From positions 389,781,483 to 389,839,383 of the forward strand of contig NC_058133.1 of assembly GCF_016433145.1 (NCBI RefSeq): a stretch of DNA of 57,901 nt, given 5' to 3'. The notes beneath the pieces are model-generated. The model made no database searches, was not told the origin of the DNA, and saw only the letters and a list, made by a program, of their open reading frames with translations. Source of the stretch: Gracilinanus agilis (Eukaryota). Made by a program: the position numbers and the translations under genes. Positions 2,225-57,901 of the stretch are shown here, one piece after another. Numbering within the stretch: position 1 is the stretch's first letter; every line of letters starts with the position of its first letter.

Positions 2225-2554
2225 GTACAGCAATAGAGAATTAAAGGGAAATTTTACCAGGTAGATAAGAATTTACTGTCATGATAACAATCCTTAGTAT
2301 ATACTCAGTGTTATTTATTTAATTATTTTGATTTGGGAAAGCAGTTAATATAACATAGAATGGGGATTCTTTGTTTATAATAAAGGGAGATGAAATTAGG
2401 CATTTAATTAGTGCCTACTATGTGCAAAGCAATGTGCTATGTGCTTTACAAATGTTATCTCAGGGAAATAGATTATAATGCATGAAGGAGAATCTTTGAA
2501 CAGATAAGCATTTAATTTATCTTTTTTTCCTCCCATTAACATTAAATATTTCAG
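2225..2554 (+). other. Predicted 5'UTR intron of first TAAR7-like gene
   Basis: Donor CAGAG|GTACAG sits at the position homologous to the gene-2 donor (alternative ACCAG|GTAGAT at 2261). Acceptor TTAAC..ATATTTCAG ends at 2554. Both donors are weak; inference only. Confidence 0.4.
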
Positions 2555-2616
2555 TGATAGTTTCTCTGCGATTCCAAAGAAAAACAAAGATACACCATAA
2601 CTCAGAGAGAGGAACA

Positions 2617-3669
2617 ATGAGCAGCAGCAATAGTTCCCAGCCTGTAGCTGTGCAGTTCTGCTATGAAAACATGAATGGGTCCTGTATCAAAACCTCCTAC
2701 TCCCCAGGATCCCGAGTCATCCTCTACTTGGCCTTTGGATTTGGGGCTCTGTTGGCTATTTTAGGAAACCTCCTGGTGATGATTTCAATTCTTCACTTCA
2801 AGCAGCTGCACTCTCCAGCCAATTTTCTCATTGCTTCCTTGGCTAGTGCTGACTTCTTGGTGGGAGCCACTGTGATGCCCTTCAGTATGGTGAGGTCAGT
2901 GGAGAGTTGCTGGTATTTTGGGGAGAGTTACTGTAAATTTCATTCCAGTTTTGAAGGGTCATTTTGTTATTGTTCCATTTTTCACTTGTGTTTCATCTCC
3001 ATTGATAGATATATTGCTGTCACTGACCCTCTGGTCTACCCAACTAAGTTCACTCTGTCAGTTTCAGGAATGTGCATTATGTTCTCCTGGCTCCTGGCCA
3101 TCACATTTAGTTTTTCACTTCTTTACACAGGTGTCAATGATGATGGGCTGGAGGAATTAGTAAGTGCCCTCGCCTGTGTGGGAGGCTGTCAGATTGCTGT
3201 GAATCAAACCTGGGTATTGATTGACTTCCTGTTGTTCTTCATTCCCACCCTAGTTATGTTCTTTCTTTACTGTAAAATTTTTCTGGTAGCTAAACAACAG
3301 GCTAGAAAGATTGAAAGTATGAGCAGCAAAACCGAGTCTTCCTCAGAGAGTTACAAAGCCAGAGTGTCCAAGAGGGAGAGAAAAGCAGCAAAAACACTGG
3401 GCATTGCAGTGGCTGCATTTCTGATTGCATGGTTCCCTTATTTTATTGAAACTATAGTTGATGCATTCCTAGGGTTCATCACCCCAACATATATATATGA
3501 AATTTTAGTTTGGGTTTCCTATTATAACTCAGCTATGAACCCTCTGATTTATGCTTTCTTTTACCCTTGGTTTCGAAGAGCAATTAAACTGATTGTCACT
3601 GGGAAAGTCTTTACAGGTCACTCTTCAACAATAGATTTGTTTTCTGAACAAATTAAGGTTTTAGACTGA
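2617..3669 (+). CDS. TAAR7: Trace amine-associated receptor, TAAR7-like paralog A (350 aa from ATG 2617)
   Basis: 7-TM aminergic GPCR with TAAR signatures ([45 protein letters not shown]). [17 protein letters not shown] and [12 protein letters not shown] resemble rodent TAAR7 as recalled. The ORF track's GTG start at 2554 is probably not used. Exact paralog name is uncertain. Confidence 0.9.
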
Positions 3670-11690: not shown

Positions 11691-11868
11691 NNNNNNNNNN
11701 NNNNNNNNNNNNNNNNNNNNNNNNNNNNNNNNNNNNNNNNNNNNNNNNNNNNNNNNNNNNNNNNNNNNNNNNNNNNNNNNNNNNNNNNNNNNNNNNNNNN
11801 NNNNNNNNNNNNNNNNNNNNNNNNNNNNNNNNNNNNNNNNNNNNNNNNNNNNNNNNNNNNNNNNNNNN
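11691..11868. other. Assembly gap (178 N)
   Basis: Run of N. Confidence 1.
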
Positions 11869-17913: not shown

Positions 17914-18180
17914 GTAAGAATCAGAGTCAAAGCAAAATTTTCTTAGATAAGCAGCTAAGGCATTTATACATATTCAGAGAAATTTTTGGTAGATTTATTG
18001 AAACTAATATTTGAATTGCTTTGAGATTAATTGCAAAAGTGTTTCTGAGTTACAGAGAATTCTGAATATGTATGAAAAGATTTGTAATTTATGGTATCGG
18101 TGGAAAAAGTTCATAATTTATTTAAAGATAGTAATTGGTAGATTTCTTAAGTCATTAATTCAATGCAACTTTATTTTAAG
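17914..18180 (+). other. Predicted 5'UTR intron (267 nt) of second TAAR7-like gene
   Basis: Strong donor CAGAG|GTAAGA. Acceptor CTTTATTTTAAG|GAGAG, with the same GAGAG exon start as the TAAR6 acceptor. Confidence 0.55.
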
Positions 18181-18255
18181 GAGAGAACTGGAGATTTCAA
18201 TGACTCCAAAACAAAAAAATTAATGATAATTCTGCAAAGTTCAGAGAGAAGAATC

Positions 18256-19320
18256 ATGAACAACAGCAATGGGTCCCAATCTACAATTGTGCAGCTTTGC
18301 TATGAGAATGTCAATGGATCCTGTTTTAAGACTCCCTATTCCTCTGGACCTCGAATGATCCTCTATGTGGCTTTTGGCTCTGGGGCTCTACTGGCTATCT
18401 TGGGAAACCTCCTGGTCATGATTTCAATCCTTCACTTCAGACAGCTGCACTCTCCAGCCAATTTTCTCATTGCCTCCTTGGCTTGTGCTGACTTTTTGGT
18501 GGGAGCCACTGTGATGCCCTTCAGCATGGTGAGGTCAGTGGAGAGTTGTTGGTACTTTGGAGAGAGTTACTGTAAACTTCACTCTTGTTTTGAAGGATCA
18601 TTTTGCTATTCTTCCATTTTTCACTTGTGTTTCATCTCCATTGATAGATACATTGCTGTCACTGACCCTCTGGTCTATCCAACCAAGTTCACTCTGAATG
18701 TTTCCCTGGTATGCATCACATTCTCATGGCTTCTTGCTATTGGTTATACCTTTTCACTTCTTTGTAGTGGTGTGAATGAGGATGGGCTGGAGGAATTAGT
18801 AAGTGCCCTCACCTGTGTGGGAGGCTGTCAGATAGCTTTGAATCAAACCTGGTCAATGATAAGTTTTCTACTGTTCTTCATCCCCACTCTGATTATGGTC
18901 ATTCTCTACTGTAAGATTTTTCTAGTAGCTAAAGAACAGGCTAGAAAGATTGAAAACACAAGTAGCAAAGGGGAATCTTCATCCTCAGTGAGTTACAAAG
19001 CCAGAGTATCCAAGAGAGAAAGAAAAGCAGCAAAAACACTGGGAATTGCAGTGATTGCATTTGTGATTTCATGGTTCCCTTACTTTATTGAAGTAATAAT
19101 TGATGCTTTCCTAGGGTTCATCACCCCAACATATATTTATGAAATTTTATTATGGTTTTCCTATTATAACTCAACCATGAACCCTCTGATTTATGCTTTC
19201 TTTTACCCTTGGTTTCGAAGAGCAATAAAATTGATTGCAACTGGGAAAGTCTTCAGAGGTCACACTTCAACAATAGATTTATTTTCTGAAAAGGTAAAGG
19301 TCTCAGATGAAACAAATTAA
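18256..19320 (+). CDS. TAAR7: Trace amine-associated receptor, TAAR7-like paralog B (354 aa from ATG 18256; alternative in-frame ATG at 18223)
   Basis: Intact 7-TM ORF with TAAR motifs and FEGSFCY in TM3; closest overall to 2617-3669. ATG 18163 of the ORF track falls in the predicted intron. Confidence 0.9.
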
Positions 19321-30977: not shown

Positions 30978-31146
30978 NNNNNNNNNNNNNNNNNNNNNNN
31001 NNNNNNNNNNNNNNNNNNNNNNNNNNNNNNNNNNNNNNNNNNNNNNNNNNNNNNNNNNNNNNNNNNNNNNNNNNNNNNNNNNNNNNNNNNNNNNNNNNNN
31101 NNNNNNNNNNNNNNNNNNNNNNNNNNNNNNNNNNNNNNNNNNNNNN
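30978..31146. other. Assembly gap (169 N)
   Basis: Run of N. Confidence 1.
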
Positions 31147-33113: not shown

Positions 33114-34169
33114 ATGAGTAGCAGCTCTGAGTCTCAGCCTGCAGCTGTAGAATTCTGCTTTGAGAATGTAAATGGGTCCTGCATTAAAAATCCCTACTCC
33201 CAGGGACCCCGATTGATCCTCTACTTGGTGTTTGGTTCTGGGGCTGTGCTTGCAGTTTTTGGAAACCTCCTGGTAATGATTTCTATCTTTCATTTTAAGC
33301 AGCTACACTCTCCAGCCAACTTTCTCATTGCCTCCTTGGCTTGTGCTGACTTTCTGGTGGGAGCCACTGTGATGCCTTTCAGCATGGTGAGGTCGGTGGA
33401 AAGTTGCTGGTATTTTGGAGATACTTTTTGTGCATTTCATAGCTGTGGTGATACAGCATTTTGCTATGCTTCCCTCTTTCATTTGTGCTTCATCTCCATT
33501 GATAGATACATTGCTGTCACTGATCCTCTGATCTACCCAACCAAGTTCACAGTCTCCATTTCTGGGCTGTGCATCGCTCTCTCCTGGATCATCCCCATTA
33601 CTTACAGTGGTTCTGTTTTCTACACAGGTGCCAATGATGATGGGCTGGAGGAATTAATAAGTGCCCTTACCTGTGTAGGGAGCTGTCAGGTTTACGTGAA
33701 TCAAAATTGGGTGCTGGTAGACTTTTTGTTGTTCTTCATGCCCACTTTAATTATGGTCATTCTTTATGCTAAGATTTTTCTTGTAGCAAAAATCCAAGCC
33801 AGAAAGATTGAAAATACAAGCAGCAAGGGGGAATCTTCATCCTCAGAGAGTTACAAAGCCAGAGTGGCCAAAAGGGAGAGAAAAGCAGCAAAAACACTGG
33901 GCATTGCTGTGATTGCATTTCTGATTTCATGGTTACCCTATTCTATTGATGCAATGATTGATGCTTTTGTGGGCTTCATCACCCCTGCCTATATTTATGA
34001 AATCCTTTGTTGGTTTGCTTATTATAATTCAGCCATGAATCCTTTGATTTATGCTTTCTTTTACCCATGGTTTAGGAAAGCAATAAAGCTGATTGTAACT
34101 GGGAAAATCTTACAGGATAGCTCTTCAACCATGAATTTATTCTCTGAGCAAGGCAAAGGATTAGAATAA
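33114..34169 (+). CDS. TAAR6: Trace amine-associated receptor 6 (351 aa)
   Basis: Intact ORF. VNQNWVL.DF, WI.PI.YSG.VFYTG, YSID..IDAF and MNLFSE match human TAAR6 as recalled. It is the last + strand TAAR before the - strand TAAR5, as in human. TAAR8 is the nearest alternative. Confidence 0.85.
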
Positions 34170-52077: not shown

Positions 52078-53109
52078 TTAGTCTTGGTACAAGTCAATGG
52101 TAGGTGTCCTGGGGGAAAAGACCTCCCGGCTCAGAACAAGTTTCAAAGCTTTTCTGAACCATTTATAGGAAAAGACATAGATCAGAGGATTGCATGCTGA
52201 GTTGAAGTAAGCAAACCAGATGAAGATGTCAAAGACTAGAGGTGGGGTGATGAAATTAAGGAGGCTGTCCACCAAGGTATCAACGGTGAATGGCAGCCAA
52301 CACAGGAGGTAAATACTGACTGCTATCCCCAGGGTCTTTGCAGCTTTCCTCTCTCGCTTAGAAGCCCCTATCTGACCGGAAGAGGTGCCCGTGCCCTTGC
52401 TCATGGTGCTGATCTGCTGGGCCTGCCTGTTGGCCACAATGAAGATCTTCACATACAGACTAATCATAATGACACAGGGAAAGAAGAACACGGGGAAGTT
52501 CAGCCAGCCCCAGAATTTATTGAACAGCAGCTGACAGCTGCCCACACAAGGCATCTCATCCAACAACATGCCCAGTCCTTCTTCCACCACATCAGTGTAG
52601 AGAAAGAAGGCAGTGTATGCTGCCGGGAGCCCCCAGCCCACCATTATGTACCTGAATGCCACCTTGACAGTGAACTTGGTAGGATAAAGCAGGGGATCGC
52701 AGATGGCACAATGGCGATCGATGGAAATGAAACACAAATGGAAGATGGAGGTAAGGCAGAAGAGTGTGTCTAGGTAGGTATGCAACCTGCAGAGGAAGTC
52801 CCCAAAGAACCAGCAGCTCTCTACTGATCGAACTGTGCTGAAAGGTAACACGAGGAGCCCCAGGAACATGTCAGCCAGTGCCAGGGAGAGCAGCAAAAAA
52901 TTAGTAGGAGTGTGGAGAGCTTTAAAATAGGACACAGCAAACACCACAAGCAAGTTTCCCAGGACGGTAATCAACATACCTATGGCACATGCCAGGTATA
53001 TGATCAACTGGACGCCCAGAGGGTGCAGCGTTCGAGGGCAAGACCCATTCACCTGATAGCATAAAGTTAAAGGCTGATCTTCAGACACAAATTCCTGGAG
53101 AGCTCCCAT
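52078..53109 (-). CDS. TAAR5: Trace amine-associated receptor 5 (343 aa)
   Basis: CYQVNGSCPRT, SYFKALHTPTNF, LHTYLDTLFC, DRHCAICDP, NKFWGWLNFP and TPPLVFDIFIWFAYFNSACNP are near-identical to human TAAR5 as recalled. Syntenic position and strand fit. Confidence 0.96.
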   Translation of the reverse strand: MGALQEFVSEDQPLTLCYQVNGSCPRTLHPLGVQLIIYLACAIGMLITVLGNLLVVFAVSYFKALHTPTNFLLLSLALADMFLGLLVLPFSTVRSVESCWFFGDFLCRLHTYLDTLFCLTSIFHLCFISIDRHCAICDPLLYPTKFTVKVAFRYIMVGWGLPAAYTAFFLYTDVVEEGLGMLLDEMPCVGSCQLLFNKFWGWLNFPVFFFPCVIMISLYVKIFIVANRQAQQISTMSKGTGTSSGQIGASKRERKAAKTLGIAVSIYLLCWLPFTVDTLVDSLLNFITPPLVFDIFIWFAYFNSACNPLIYVFSYKWFRKALKLVLSREVFSPRTPTIDLYQD

Positions 53110-53330: not shown

Positions 53331-54827
53331 AAAGAGACCTGCAAAATATATTCTCCCAGAAAAAGTCTAGATCTTCCTCTGGGGTTAGTCAAGTAGAAGA
53401 ATATTACTCAATTGTGAAAAAAAAAAAGAGTCGGGTGAAAATGACACTGAAGTAGAATTTTTAGACTGCATTTGACTTCATGTTCCAAATTCAAAAAAAG
53501 AGGCATAACTTTTTTGTTTTGTTTAACTAAATCATCACATGGTCCTCAATTTCCAGGTTCACAGTTTGAAAAATTAGTGAATGTGAAAAATTGATTCTTA
53601 AAGAATCATGTTCAGAGATTCCAATTGAATGATTTATGTCAATGGCTACCAACCCCACTTACAATACCTTTGCAATTAAAGGATTAGAGAATAGGCCAGT
53701 AGGATTTCTATTCACAGTGCATGATTTCCAAATCCTGCACTTTACTAGGATTTTCAGACTTTGAAGCATTGATAAGATTAAGGCAGGAAATCCTGATTAA
53801 TATATTCTGGAGCAGGGTAATAGAATCTTAAATAAATGAAACTGACAGTTTAATATTCCTCTGTTGTTCTAATACTTACTGAGGTGAAAATGGCAAGCAA
53901 TGCTTTGGAATAGTGTCTCCTGCATCCAGTAGGTTTTGTCACATTGTGAATTTCTTCTTAGGGCTCTGTTTAGATCAAGGGATGGGTGAAATCCATTCAG
54001 GTATTTATACTTCAATAGAAAGTCATTTTCACTCAATGGAATGTGGTATCCAATCAGCACTAAAGTTAGTCTCAAAGGAATTCCTTTACTGGATACACAG
54101 CATACCAGGCTCAGGTGTTTAAGAATCAAACAAATCCCAGTTCAACATAAATAAACATCAAGTGCCCTAACATTTCAAGTTGGAATTCATCCTTGCCAAA
54201 TTTATTTTCTGGGCAATCCCCTGGCTTTTTTCTTTTTTTGCTTTTGTAGTCTGTCATATGTAAATTTCTTTTCAAATGGAAGATTTCTGGAAGAATTCAA
54301 GGTATAAAGTCCAGAAGCCTTTGCCATTCCCTAATTAACATATTTCTGAAAAATTACTAATTCAAGAGAAACCAGGCTTTCAGTGGATGCATAACTATGG
54401 ATAAATAATATAAAAGAAAAATGAATATTGCAAGGCTAATGAATAATACTAATGAATTTCTAAAACTGCATAAATTTCTCAAGCAGAAAAATTAACTCTG
54501 TTCAATACAGAGAGGGGATCAGCAAATTTTAACTAAGGAGAATACAGGAAAGGTGATTATCAAAATTTCACCAAGAACAAAGTCTAATAAAAAATAACAA
54601 TTAAAAAGTCAGAAATATTTAAGCCTCCTTAATAATTAAGCTTGTCATTGCTTTTCATAACTTTTGACTCTAATAAGAATCTTTATGATCCTCAGAATTA
54701 ACAATTATTTCAATTTACAATCCTCATTTGGCATAAAAGAAGGAAATAATTTTGAAAGATGGAATTCATAAATAAAGATAGCTCTCATTTAAGGTTCATT
54801 AGATATAGATATAGATATAGATATAAA

Positions 54828-55037
54828 TTTTAAACCCTTTCCTTCTGTCTTAGAATCAATACTGTGTATTGGTTCCAAGGCAGAAGAGTAGTAATGGCTA
54901 GACAATGGGCATTAAGTGACTTGCCCAGGGTCACACACTTAGGAAGTGTCTGAGGCCAGATTTAAACCTAGGACCTCCCATCTCTAGGTCTCTAGGCCTG
55001 GCTCATAATCCCACCCAATGGGCCACCCAGCTGCCAC
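54828..55037 (-). mobile_element. SINE1 preceded by (GATATA)n
   Basis: CCTTCTGTCTTAGAATCAATACTGTGTATTGGTTCCAAGGCAGAAGAG tail; CORE GTGACTTGCCCAGGGTCACAC. Confidence 0.85.
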
Positions 55038-55104
55038 CCACCCCCAATTTTCTAAATATTAAAGGAGTTGTGAAGTATCACAATATGGAAGATCACCCAA
55101 TTCA

Positions 55105-55529: not shown

Positions 55530-56815
55530 TTTTTTTTTCAAAAAGTATGATTAACTTTATTTTTTTAAACAAAGTTTAAAATAAAACAGTATTAAAATAT
55601 TACATTTATACAATATATGTACAAATAAGTTGTGGTGTTTTCCACAAGCAATGCACTGAAACATTTTAGGGAAAATAAACTAACTTAGTGCAGTTTCTTC
55701 AAAAGAAGAAAAGGTTTCACAGGTCAAGTAGCAGAAATAATATAGTGTAATTTTTTTCTGATGAAGTCCAGTTGCTTAGCTACTGAGCTAAAAATATTTA
55801 TTTACATAGAAGCTTTTTTTACACCAAGTTCTGGAGTGCTCCCGCTTTGAGTTCTTACATTATTTTTCCAGTAAGTTTTCTAGAAACCACTGTATATACA
55901 TCTTTATTCTGCTTTAGTCTTTTCAACTTTAAATCATCTCATATTGTCCTTTTTTCATAATGTACTTTTTGAGGGGAACCCTAAATTTTATGAACATAAA
56001 TGACTTTAGTCTACAGTTTTTAAAAAGTACCTTAAAGGGGATATTTTCTTTGATATTTTCATAAAGCTATTCTTCATATAAAAATTTTCCCTACTAAAAT
56101 CATTGTGATAATATACAAAGGTTTTATATTAAAACAACCCGTATATTAAACAAAGCTCTGATTAAGATGTGCACAGCTATTTTGCTGAATCTGGAGTTTA
56201 GAAAAGCCAACCTTTTCCTTGTTTTATCTTTTTTGTTCTTACCCAAAGATTATACTGAAATTCACAAAAGTTCATGTATTTTGGAGGAGAATGCTATGGC
56301 AGCTGTAATGAAAATGTCATCATCTTATTCTATAACTTAAACCTCTGTAAACAGTCAAGAATTTTTTCAAGAATTAACTGAATAGCACCAATCAAATGAG
56401 TTCTTGAACTTCCAGAGTACAATTTAAAGTGGCACTCATCTAGTCCAAAACATCTCAAACAGTAACATTCCTAATTGATCAGAATGAACTTTGTTGCACG
56501 AGTCCCAAAAATGTAGCTAAGGTAAAAATTAGACTGACTACATAGTTCTTGGATCTGTATTCACCCTGGGAATGAAATACTAATATTTGTAAACTAGTTC
56601 GGCTGTTGTTTTTTTTGACAGCTAAGATTTGAACTATGGTTATCCCATTCTGAATGGGTAGAGGCTTTTAACTCGTTCATGGCAGTGTAATTTCTGAATT
56701 GGTTAGGACTATTACTAAAGTTGTTTTAGCTTTTTTAGTACTCCAAAAGGAATATAATATTCTACTGCCAAGTCAGAACAAATCCACTCGGCAAGCTCTC
56801 AGTTCAACTTTGCCT
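55530..56815 (-). other. CCNE2: 3'UTR, poly(A) signal and poly(A) remnant of the CCNE2 retrocopy
   Basis: AATAAA at 55561-55556 (minus), then 17 nt, then A9 (55538-55530). The terminal 120 nt resemble the recalled human CCNE2 mRNA end (GAAAACACCAC..TGTACATAT..TTTTAATACTGTTT..AAAAAATAAA). Confidence 0.8.
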
Positions 56816-57901
56816 TTAGTGTTTTCTGGGGGATTTTTCTGTGCTCTTCGGTGGTGTCATGATGCCTCCGTTGCACACTGGTGACAACTGTCCCACCTTT
56901 GTGAAAGCAGACACATAATTGACTTCCTCCAGCATAGCCAAATAATTTGTGTGTGTCTGGATATTATGTCTGTCTTCTACAGAAATCTTCTTAAAAATCT
57001 TCAGTTTCACCGGAGGTCCACCCTTCACTACTCTGGCAAAAGGTACCATCCATTCTATACATTCTGAAATATTGTCCCAGTCTAAACCTGACGCTTTCTT
57101 AACAACTTCAATGGAGGTAAAATGGCATAAAGCAGCTGCTGCCAATATTCTATACTGGAATTCTAATGAGTCAATAGAGAGAATACACAGATCCAGGAGC
57201 TGGGCTATCTGAACAAACTTTTCCTGGGAATACTGAGGTAGGAGTACTTTAGGAACATCTTTTAGAGCATCGACTTGGAGAAAGACATTCAACCAGGCAA
57301 TAACTGTTACTGGACAGAGCTCCCACTTTAAAGCCTTTAATATAATGAGTTCCATCCCTATGATATCATCTTCACTGCAAGCACCATCAGTAACATAAGC
57401 AAATTCTTGTAATTTAGGAGCATAGATTTCCTCAAGTTTTGCAGCAATGAATAATGAGGTAATACCAATAAGCTGAAGCATATTTTTGTTTATATCCTTT
57501 TGTGTCAACATAAATCTATCAAAAAAATCTTGAGCAAGATAAAACGTTTCCCTGTGAAGTGTATATACTTCACATACCTCTAAAAGCCAGTCTAGAAGTA
57601 TTGATCTCATCTGTGGTTCTAAGTCAGAATGTAGCATTTCAAAATGTTTATCATGAACATATTTGGTCTCCTTTTTTAACATATTAAACCAGACATCCTT
57701 AGAACATCCCCAACTTAGGTCAGGCAGAGGTGAAGGATTTATAAAAAGGTTTTTAAACCTGTAGTTAGTAAACCTGGAGAAGTCACTGGTGACAGTTTCT
57801 TTGTGTGGGGTTTCAATAATAATGCAAGGAGTGATACCCCCAGATAACACAGGTGGCCAACAATTCCTAATTTCATATTGCTGTCTCTTGGCTCCAGTCT
57901 C
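56816..57901 (-). CDS. CCNE2: Intronless cyclin E2 retrocopy (retrogene candidate), 5' end outside the window; 361 open codons visible
   Basis: Reading from the edge gives [35 protein letters not shown]..., with cyclin box [33 protein letters not shown] and C-terminus [15 protein letters not shown], closely matching human CCNE2 as recalled. No introns although the parental gene is multi-exon. Whether it is functional cannot be decided from sequence. Confidence 0.92.

What the first reader, a model, noticed from the sequence alone, without database searches (positions are those of the whole stretch)
56816..57901. Intact intronless cyclin E2 retrocopy: candidate marsupial retrogene
Seen: 361 consecutive sense codons with no stop or frameshift up to the window edge. 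It retains the cyclin-box MRSIL motif, the CDK-contacting KLEE segment, the N-terminal ETPHKE site and the C-terminal MTPPKS phosphodegron. Established: parental CCNE2 is multi-exon and lies elsewhere, next to INTS8; TPPKS is the FBXW7 degron; I know of no such gene in the human or mouse TAAR cluster. Inference: an L1-mediated retrocopy that is either very young or under purifying selection, which would give this lineage a third E-type cyclin. Differences from recalled human CCNE2 ([16 protein letters not shown]) cannot be assigned to retrocopy or lineage without the parental gene.
Basis: partly seen in the sequence, partly recalled or inferred. Interest (0 to 1): 0.78.

Follow-up and report, generated by a model that had tools for sequence, protein, structure and literature searches.

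The report
Young cyclin E2 retrocopy in opossum
This is a real, reverse-transcribed, intron-free copy of the cell-cycle gene cyclin E2 that landed beside an odorant-receptor gene in the agile gracile opossum a few million years ago; its reading frame is still open, most likely only because it is young, and nothing shows that it works as a gene.

Summary
On the minus strand, 56819-57901 is 361 sense codons followed by TAA at 56816-56818, with both cyclin domains.

It is a processed CCNE2 retrocopy:
- eight parental GT-AG introns are precisely absent, and a ninth lies in places I could not analyse;
- the 1,279-nt 3'UTR is colinear with the parent as far as AATAAA and the cleavage site;
- seven untemplated A follow.

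The window is from Gracilinanus agilis chromosome CM028238.1, 2.4 kb upstream of TAAR5. I recovered this species' own parental CCNE2 on another chromosome, next to INTS8.

- **Changes on the copy's own branch:** 3 replacements (L181I, V282I, G359R), 1 synonymous change, 8 UTR substitutions and 1 UTR indel. That is about 0.5% divergence.
- **Selection test:** dN/dS on that branch is 0.6-0.8, with a 95% interval of 0.10-2.4. This fits neutrality and has no power to show constraint.
- **Open frame by chance:** a neutral copy of this age keeps 361 codons open with probability about 0.4-0.55.
- **Age:** the copy carries Gracilinanus-lineage changes, so it inserted after the split from Monodelphis. 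It is not a marsupial-wide gene.
- **Control:** Monodelphis has its own independent CCNE2 retrocopy. It is cut by an L1 yet still in frame.
- **Not testable here:** the 5' end (about 44 codons and the ATG) lies in a 4,457-N assembly gap, and expression could not be tested.

Verdict: an ordinary young retrocopy, probably a processed pseudogene.

The parts
56819..57901 (-). Intronless CCNE2 coding sequence: 361 codons, corresponding to residues 45-405 of the 405-aa parental protein. It carries the Cyclin_N and Cyclin_C domains. Its 5' end runs into an assembly gap.
   Evidence: It aligns without gaps to the species' own parental exons.
56816..56818 (-). Stop codon TAA, at the same position as in the parent.
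55537..56815 (-). Retroposed 3'UTR of 1,279 nt, colinear with the parental last exon down to the cleavage site. Against the G. agilis parent it shows 11 substitutions and 1 single-base indel.
55556..55561 (-). AATAAA polyadenylation signal inherited from the parental mRNA, about 19 nt before the end of homology.
55530..55536 (-). Seven untemplated A: the remnant of the poly(A) tail. The parental genomic sequence continues with TGGG at this point. Homology to the parent ends here.
56929..57866 (-). Span holding the eight visible exon-exon joints. The corresponding GT-AG introns are present in the parental genes of four marsupials and precisely absent here.
57321..57360 (-). After they were masked in every script (codons 181-194 left out of the counts) and sent to no search tool. 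The L181I replacement at their border is known only from earlier calls.
56827..57566 (-). Retrocopy-specific coding changes against its own parent: 57566 (synonymous), 57058 (V282I) and 56827 (G359R). Two further differences, at 57188 and 56870, are synonymous changes on the parent's side.
   Evidence: polarised with Monodelphis, Sarcophilus and Trichosurus.

Best explanation
A spliced, polyadenylated CCNE2 mRNA of the Gracilinanus lineage was reverse-transcribed and inserted 2.4 kb upstream of TAAR5 on another chromosome, presumably by LINE-1 machinery. This happened well after the split from Monodelphis, at roughly one eighth of that branch. From memory-based split dates, that is a few million years ago. 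Since then the copy has collected changes at about the same rate in replacement, silent and untranslated positions. That is the pattern of a sequence under no detectable constraint. Its open frame is what a copy this young shows about half the time by chance. It is most likely a young processed pseudogene, or at best raw material for a gene, and not a working third E-type cyclin.

Shown: retrocopy nature, parent, lineage, and the number and kind of changes. Inferred: the L1 mechanism, the absolute age and the lack of function.
For: - **Retrocopy nature.** Intron loss is exact at 8 visible parental GT-AG junctions. The 3'UTR is colinear to the cleavage site, then AATAAA and seven untemplated A follow.
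- **Parent.** The window lies on GCA_016433145.1 CM028238.1. The species' own parent lies on CM028235.1 next to INTS8. The assemblies are named in PMC11438212.
- **Changes on the retro branch.** There are 3 N (non-synonymous) and 1 S (synonymous) changes, 8 UTR substitutions and 1 UTR indel, giving d=0.0051. Omega by N/S is 0.80. Omega by N/(S+UTR) is 0.59, with a 95% interval of 0.10-2.36. P(N<=3 of 12)=0.32.
- **Parent branch over the same time.** 0 N, 2 S and 3 UTR changes.
- **Open frame by chance.** P(361 codons stay open under neutrality)=0.40-0.55.
- **Lineage.** The copy shares Gracilinanus-lineage derived states with its parent: 11 UTR columns of pattern AABBBB and 3 or more CDS sites.
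- **Internal control.** The Monodelphis retrocopy L002 has 8 N and at most 1 S changes and 13 UTR changes, and is cut by a 6.3-kb L1. Even so, its 361 homologous codons are still in frame.
- **Context.** Earlier notes list many intact young retrocopies in this genome (unchecked).
Against: - With only 12 changes on the branch, the test cannot exclude moderate purifying selection. The lower bound on omega is 0.10.
- All three replacements are mild or peripheral: L to I, V to I, and G to R three residues from the C-terminus.
- Every named motif is kept.
- The deposited annotation calls a 377-aa coding gene here, with an exon upstream of the gap. That model looks homology-driven.
- No expression data could be examined, so transcription is untested rather than absent.
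Confidence: 0.8

Rival explanations
1. A functional young retrogene. The copy is transcribed, perhaps from a recruited upstream exon or promoter and perhaps in the germ line, and makes a CDK2-binding cyclin E2 paralogue. This would give Gracilinanus a third E-type cyclin.
For: - The frame is open over all 361 visible codons.
- Both cyclin folds and the phosphodegron motifs are intact.
- There are only three replacements, and all are conservative or peripheral.
- The point estimate of omega is below 1, at 0.59-0.80.
- The deposited annotation models a 377-aa product with an upstream exon.
Against: - The omega interval of 0.10-2.4 includes 1.
- An open frame is expected by chance with P of about 0.45.
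- An L1-broken Monodelphis copy of greater divergence is equally in frame.
- The start codon and 44 codons are unseen, inside a 4,457-N gap.
- The sequence beyond the gap shows no parental 5' homology.
- The same kind of annotation pipeline 'splices out' a whole L1 to call the Monodelphis copy coding, so a gene model is not evidence of function.
- Most young retrocopies are not functional (general knowledge; review PMC5470649 was listed but not read).
Confidence: 0.13
2. An older retrocopy whose low divergence from the parent is kept up by gene conversion with the parental gene.
For: Nothing specific. This is only a formal alternative reading of the 99.5% similarity.
Against: - Parent and copy are on different chromosomes.
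- The 17 differences are spread evenly over CDS and UTR, with no converted tract visible.
- The copy shares every Gracilinanus-lineage state of the parent along the whole 2.36 kb, which is what a late insertion predicts.
Confidence: 0.04
3. An assembly artefact, such as cDNA contamination or a mis-join at a contig end.
For: - The copy abuts a gap.
- The assembly is a linked-read build with 8.25% N and a contig N50 of 57 kb (PMC8390783).
Against: - The copy is contiguous with 2.4 kb of unique flank and TAAR5 in the same contig.
- It differs from the parental mRNA at 17 positions.
- A public run of the same organism label holds 74% of its sampled words, though that run may be the source sample.
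Confidence: 0.01

Closest known systems
Parental CCNE2 of Gracilinanus agilis (L007; GCA_016433145.1 CM028235.1, next to INTS8; 405-aa product)
   Same: The copy is 358 of 361 residues identical. It has the same stop codon, 3'UTR and polyadenylation signal, and all cyclin-box and degron motifs.
   Different: - The parent has GT-AG introns at each of the 8 visible joints; the copy has none.
- They lie on different chromosomes.
- The copy ends in an untemplated A-run.
- The copy carries L181I, V282I and G359R.
Monodelphis domestica 'G1/S-specific cyclin-E2-like' (XP_001379931.2, P0123; locus L002)
   Same: It is also a processed CCNE2 retrocopy of a didelphid, with colinear CDS and 3'UTR and a short A-tail. 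Its frame is still open on both sides, and it is annotated as protein-coding.
   Different: - It is an independent event. It carries Monodelphis-lineage states, sits at another locus near a KRAB zinc-finger-like ORF, and shares no flank homology with the window.
- It is interrupted by a 6.3-kb L1 with an 11-bp duplication.
- It shows a clearly neutral pattern of 8 N against at most 1 S changes.
Young mammalian retrocopies with intact ORFs, the general class (Carelli et al. 2016, PMC4772013; only its abstract was seen)
   Same: It is an mRNA-derived, intronless duplicate that has lost its parental promoter. It is lineage-specific, and its ORF is intact because little time has passed.
   Different: Nothing here departs from the class. 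What marks a retrogene out from the class (expression, constraint, conservation) was either not testable or not found.

Membership tests
Cyclin E2 (CCNE2) sequence family | Cyclin_N and Cyclin_C folds, and closest similarity to CCNE2 orthologues. | tested here: met
   Pfam gives E=9.9e-43 and 5.3e-11. The ORF is 98-99% identical to marsupial CCNE2 and 87-88% identical to eutherian and monotreme CCNE2.
Cyclin E2 (CCNE2) sequence family | MRSIL cyclin-box motif and the N- and C-terminal TP phosphodegron motifs are retained. | tested here: met
   Read directly in the translation. These columns are invariant in the 17-sequence alignment. That they act as FBXW7 degrons is established knowledge about cyclin E and was not tested here.
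Processed (L1-type) retrocopy | Precise absence of the parental introns. | tested here: met
   Eight GT-AG introns of the parental genes of G. agilis, Monodelphis, Sarcophilus and Trichosurus are missing at exact joints. A ninth joint lies in the masked places; it was seen only.
Processed (L1-type) retrocopy | Colinear 3'UTR ending at the polyadenylation site, followed by an untemplated A-tail. | tested here: met
   The 1,279-nt UTR is 99% identical to the parent. AATAAA lies at 55556-55561, and seven untemplated A lie at 55530-55536.
Processed (L1-type) retrocopy | Target-site duplications flanking the insert. | not testable with these tools
The 5' end lies inside a 4,457-N run.
Processed (L1-type) retrocopy | A genomic location unlinked to the parent. 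| tested here: met
   The copy is on CM028238.1 beside TAAR5. The parent is on CM028235.1 beside INTS8.
Functional retrogene | A complete ORF with a start codon. | not testable with these tools
   Codons 1-44 and the ATG are in the gap. The first in-frame ATG in the visible part is codon 74 of the 361.
Functional retrogene | Purifying selection on the retrocopy's own branch (omega significantly below 1). | tested here: not met
   The branch has 3 N, 1 S and 8 UTR changes. Omega is 0.59-0.80, with a 95% interval of 0.10-2.36, and P=0.32. The test has low power, so it fails to show constraint; it does not prove neutrality.
Functional retrogene | Transcription that can be told apart from the parent's. 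| not testable with these tools
No G. agilis RNA run was offered, although kidney, muscle and liver RNA-seq exists according to PMC8390783.
Functional retrogene | Conservation of the insertion and its frame in related species. | tested here: inconclusive
   Shared derived states date the insertion after the Gracilinanus/Monodelphis split, so no Monodelphis orthologue is expected. The Monodelphis TAAR5 locus itself could not be fetched. No closer relative was available.

The most novel reading that the evidence does not exclude
The copy is a newborn working gene: a Gracilinanus-specific third E-type cyclin, transcribed from an upstream exon or promoter beyond the gap, as the deposited 377-aa model suggests. 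It could be germ-line-specific and still bind CDK2.
Probability: 0.12. Interest if true: 0.5.

Novelty: new member of a known kind. Interest (0 to 1): 0.17.

Why it matters
As found, it matters little. It is one more young processed copy in a genome where LINEs make up 42% of the sequence (PMC8390783) and where many such copies have been noted.

It is useful mainly as a worked example. An unbroken 361-codon frame with every motif intact is not evidence of function when the copy is only 0.5% diverged. The neighbouring species supplies a control: an L1-broken copy that is equally in frame.

One mild curiosity is that CCNE2 has been retroposed independently at least twice, and probably three times, in didelphids. 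That fits high germ-line or early-embryo expression of the parent.

If the copy did prove to be expressed and constrained, it would be an extra G1/S cyclin in a semelparous marsupial. That would interest people working on cell-cycle evolution.

Tried and rejected
1. **Retrieving the 5' remainder.** The locus fetched through TAAR5 shows that window base 57902 onward is 4,457 N. The 753 real bases beyond it have no similarity to the parental 5' exons.
2. **Reads.** The look-up of sequencing runs offered one run of the same organism label and many runs of two relatives. There is therefore no expression evidence, no read-level check of the parent and no relatives' contigs. After that call those places were masked in all scripts and sent to no search tool.
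3. **The Monodelphis TAAR5 locus.** The TAAR5 search and the cluster look-up did not expose a Monodelphis TAAR5 protein to anchor on.
4. **The third Monodelphis copy.** P0014 (F6PVW2) is not on record for context. P0245 turned out to be a TAAR inside the window.
5. **An indirect selection estimate made before the parent was found.** It compared the excess of UTR changes on the Gracilinanus lineage with replacement changes. It gave omega of about 0.3 with 2lnLR 1.4-4.9. I reject it in favour of the direct comparison. The Gracilinanus parental lineage itself proved faster in the UTR than the Monodelphis one, which had inflated the estimate.
6. **'No indels in the CDS against many in the UTR' as a sign of frame selection.** Rejected. 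The parental UTRs collect indels at a similar rate, and only one UTR indel is specific to the retrocopy.
7. **Orthology of the Monodelphis 'cyclin-E2-like' gene with this copy.** Rejected: the flanks differ and the lineage states differ.
8. **Literature.** No paper mentions a CCNE2 retrocopy.

Full report
**1. The observation**

The minus strand of 56816-57901 reads as 361 sense codons followed by TAA. The plus strand is full of stops.

The product carries Cyclin_N (E=9.9e-43) and Cyclin_C (E=5.3e-11). It is 98% identical, without gaps, to Sarcophilus cyclin E2.

**2. Source and surroundings**

An exact look-up of the neighbouring 343-aa ORF (52078-53109, minus strand) places the window on GCA_016433145.1, chromosome CM028238.1. 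PMC11438212 names that assembly as the agile gracile opossum, AgileGrace.

The neighbour is TAAR5, 94% identical to wombat TAAR5. Three further intact TAAR ORFs lie on the plus strand.

The same look-up shows that the window does not simply stop at 57901. In the assembly, the next 4,457 bases are N. The assembly is a linked-read build with 8.25% N (PMC8390783), so this looks like an ordinary gap.

The expected 44 N-terminal codons, the start codon, the 5'UTR and any target-site duplication are therefore out of reach. The 753 real bases on the far side of the gap have no similarity to parental 5' exons.

The deposited annotation calls a 377-aa cyclin gene here. Its range runs across the gap and beyond the fetched locus.

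**3. It is a processed retrocopy**

I compared the copy with the parental CCNE2 genes of Monodelphis (L003), Sarcophilus (L004), Trichosurus (L005) and G. agilis itself (L007). All four lie tail-to-tail with INTS8. The window sequence aligns to them as nine exon blocks.

Every visible joint coincides with a GT-AG intron in the parents. Eight joints are visible. A ninth lies in places I could no longer analyse (see section 7).

After the stop codon, 1,279 nt of 3'UTR run colinear with the parental last exon. They reach AATAAA (55556-55561) and the cleavage site. There the parent's genomic sequence goes on with TGGG, while the window has seven extra A (55530-55536), and homology ends.

Parent and copy are on different chromosomes. 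These are the defining marks of an mRNA-derived, L1-type insertion. Only the target-site duplication could not be checked.

**4. The parent of the same species, and the selection test**

The G. agilis parent was found by guessing that its 405-aa product is identical to residues 112-516 of the Monodelphis protein P0125. The exact look-up hit GCA_016433145.1 CM028235.1.

FIAAKLEE (A instead of S) is the parental didelphid state. DDIIGMEL (L181I) belongs to the retrocopy.

In the 347 codons I could analyse, copy and parent differ at 5 bases. In the UTR they differ at 11 bases and one single-base indel. Polarised with Monodelphis, Sarcophilus and Trichosurus, the two branches look like this:

| Branch | Replacement changes | Synonymous changes | UTR substitutions | UTR indels |
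|---|---|---|---|---|
| Retrocopy | 3 (L181I; V282I; G359R) | 1 | 8 | 1 |
| Parent, same time span | 0 | 2 | 3 | 0 |

- Divergence on the retro branch is 12 substitutions in 2,362 nt, or 0.51%.
- Omega is 0.80 by N/S. It is 0.59 when silent plus UTR sites serve as the neutral yardstick, with a 95% interval of 0.10-2.36.
- The chance of 3 or fewer of 12 changes falling on replacement sites under a uniform rate is 0.32.
- The pairwise dN/dS of 0.18 (2 N against 3 S in the analysed codons) is a mixture of a constrained parent and the copy. It rests on five changes.

The data therefore fit neutrality and cannot show constraint. It is not excluded either.

**5. Is the open frame surprising?**

About 3.9% of transition-weighted single-base changes in this ORF would create a stop. 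I assumed 0.51% divergence and an indel-to-substitution ratio of 0.08-0.15. The retro branch itself shows 1 indel per 8 UTR substitutions. Under those assumptions, the chance that 361 codons stay open under no selection is 0.40-0.55.

Monodelphis supplies a natural control. Its 'G1/S-specific cyclin-E2-like' gene (P0123, L002) is another CCNE2 retrocopy.

- It is about twice as diverged, with 8 replacement changes, at most 1 synonymous change and 13 UTR changes.
- It is split by a 6.3-kb L1 flanked by an 11-bp duplication.
- Its 361 homologous codons are nevertheless still in frame.
- It is still annotated as coding, because the L1 is treated as an intron.

A gene model and an open frame therefore carry little weight here.

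**6. Age and lineage**

The copy has the didelphid-specific parental residues (G3, P17, A154 and I302 in the numbering of the 361). These are absent from Australidelphian, eutherian and monotreme sequences.

It also shares with its own parent the changes that arose on the Gracilinanus lineage after the split from Monodelphis. These are 11 UTR columns of pattern AABBBB and at least 3 CDS sites. It has none of the Monodelphis-lineage states.

It therefore inserted in the Gracilinanus lineage. Its branch (0.0051) is about 13% of the per-lineage silent divergence between the two opossums (dS 0.0765 in total).

From memory, the split is about 20-30 million years old. That puts the insertion at roughly 2-4 million years; the absolute date is an estimate and was not measured here.

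The Monodelphis copy L002 carries Monodelphis-lineage states and shares no flank homology with the window. It is an independent event. A third Monodelphis product (F6PVW2, P0014) has about 11 private replacements. It probably marks another copy, but its locus could not be fetched.

'Marsupial retrogene' is thus too broad. This is a Gracilinanus-lineage insertion.

**7. What could not be done**

I masked them in all scripts, so codons 181-194 are left out of the counts. The L181I change at their border comes, made earlier.

Expression is therefore untested. No G. agilis RNA run was offered in any case, though kidney, muscle and liver RNA-seq exists (PMC8390783).

The Monodelphis TAAR5 locus could not be anchored. 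Absence of the insertion there is therefore inferred from shared derived states and was not seen directly.

**8. Verdict**

This is a real, young, lineage-specific processed retrocopy of CCNE2. Its mechanism of origin is clear, though the role of L1 is inferred. Its present state is most likely a processed pseudogene that has not yet had time to break (confidence about 0.8). A newborn functional retrogene remains possible (about 0.12-0.13).

No paper in the library mentions a CCNE2 retrocopy, but the phenomenon is ordinary. Earlier notes of this scan list many intact young retrocopies in the same genome (unchecked).

Noticed in passing
window 2554-3669 (+), 18163-19320 (+), 33114-34169 (+), 52078-53109 (-): There are four intact single-exon TAAR ORFs. 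The three tandem plus-strand genes are about 48% identical to TAAR5 and look TAAR6-9-like; the middle one equals the annotated 354-aa product P0245. The fourth is TAAR5, on the minus strand.
   Followed up: partly
L002 10291-16609 (Monodelphis GCA_027887165.1 CM051224.1): A 6.3-kb L1 is inserted into the coding sequence of an independent Monodelphis CCNE2 retrocopy. It shows an ORF1 fragment and an ORF2 split into 439-aa and 716-aa frames, and is flanked by an 11-bp duplication. RefSeq models the L1 as an intron and names the 405-aa product 'G1/S-specific cyclin-E2-like' (XP_001379931.2). This is likely an annotation artefact.
   Followed up: partly
P0014 (UniProt F6PVW2_MONDO): This 333-aa Monodelphis cyclin-E2-like prediction has about 11 private replacements and two internal gaps. 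It probably marks a third, older CCNE2 retrocopy in Monodelphis. Its genomic place is not on record in the collection.
   Followed up: partly
L007 and L003 (parental CCNE2 of G. agilis and Monodelphis): The canonical 405-aa CCNE2 proteins of the two opossums are identical, although silent divergence is 7.65%. That is zero replacements in the 347 codons counted. The parental 3'UTR changed more on the Gracilinanus lineage than on the Monodelphis lineage (about 14-16 against 8-9 substitutions), while silent coding sites did not show that excess.
   Followed up: partly
window 11691-11868, 30978-31146, 41332-41822; L001 754-5208: These are runs of N: 178, 169 and 491 bases inside the window, and 4,457 bases just past its end. 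They fit an assembly with 8.25% N. They were left untouched.
   Followed up: no
window 54800-55050: A (GATATA)n microsatellite is followed by a marsupial SINE-like element, about 500 bp downstream of the retrocopy's A-tail. The element's only matches in the Monodelphis locus L002 are two short hits of about 55 bp.
   Followed up: no
L001 1-6294 (window 56816 to beyond 63109): The deposited annotation of G. agilis calls a 377-aa cyclin product here. Its gene range crosses the 4.4-kb gap and starts upstream of the fetched locus. That implies a modelled upstream exon contributing about 16 residues in place of the canonical 44.
   Followed up: partly
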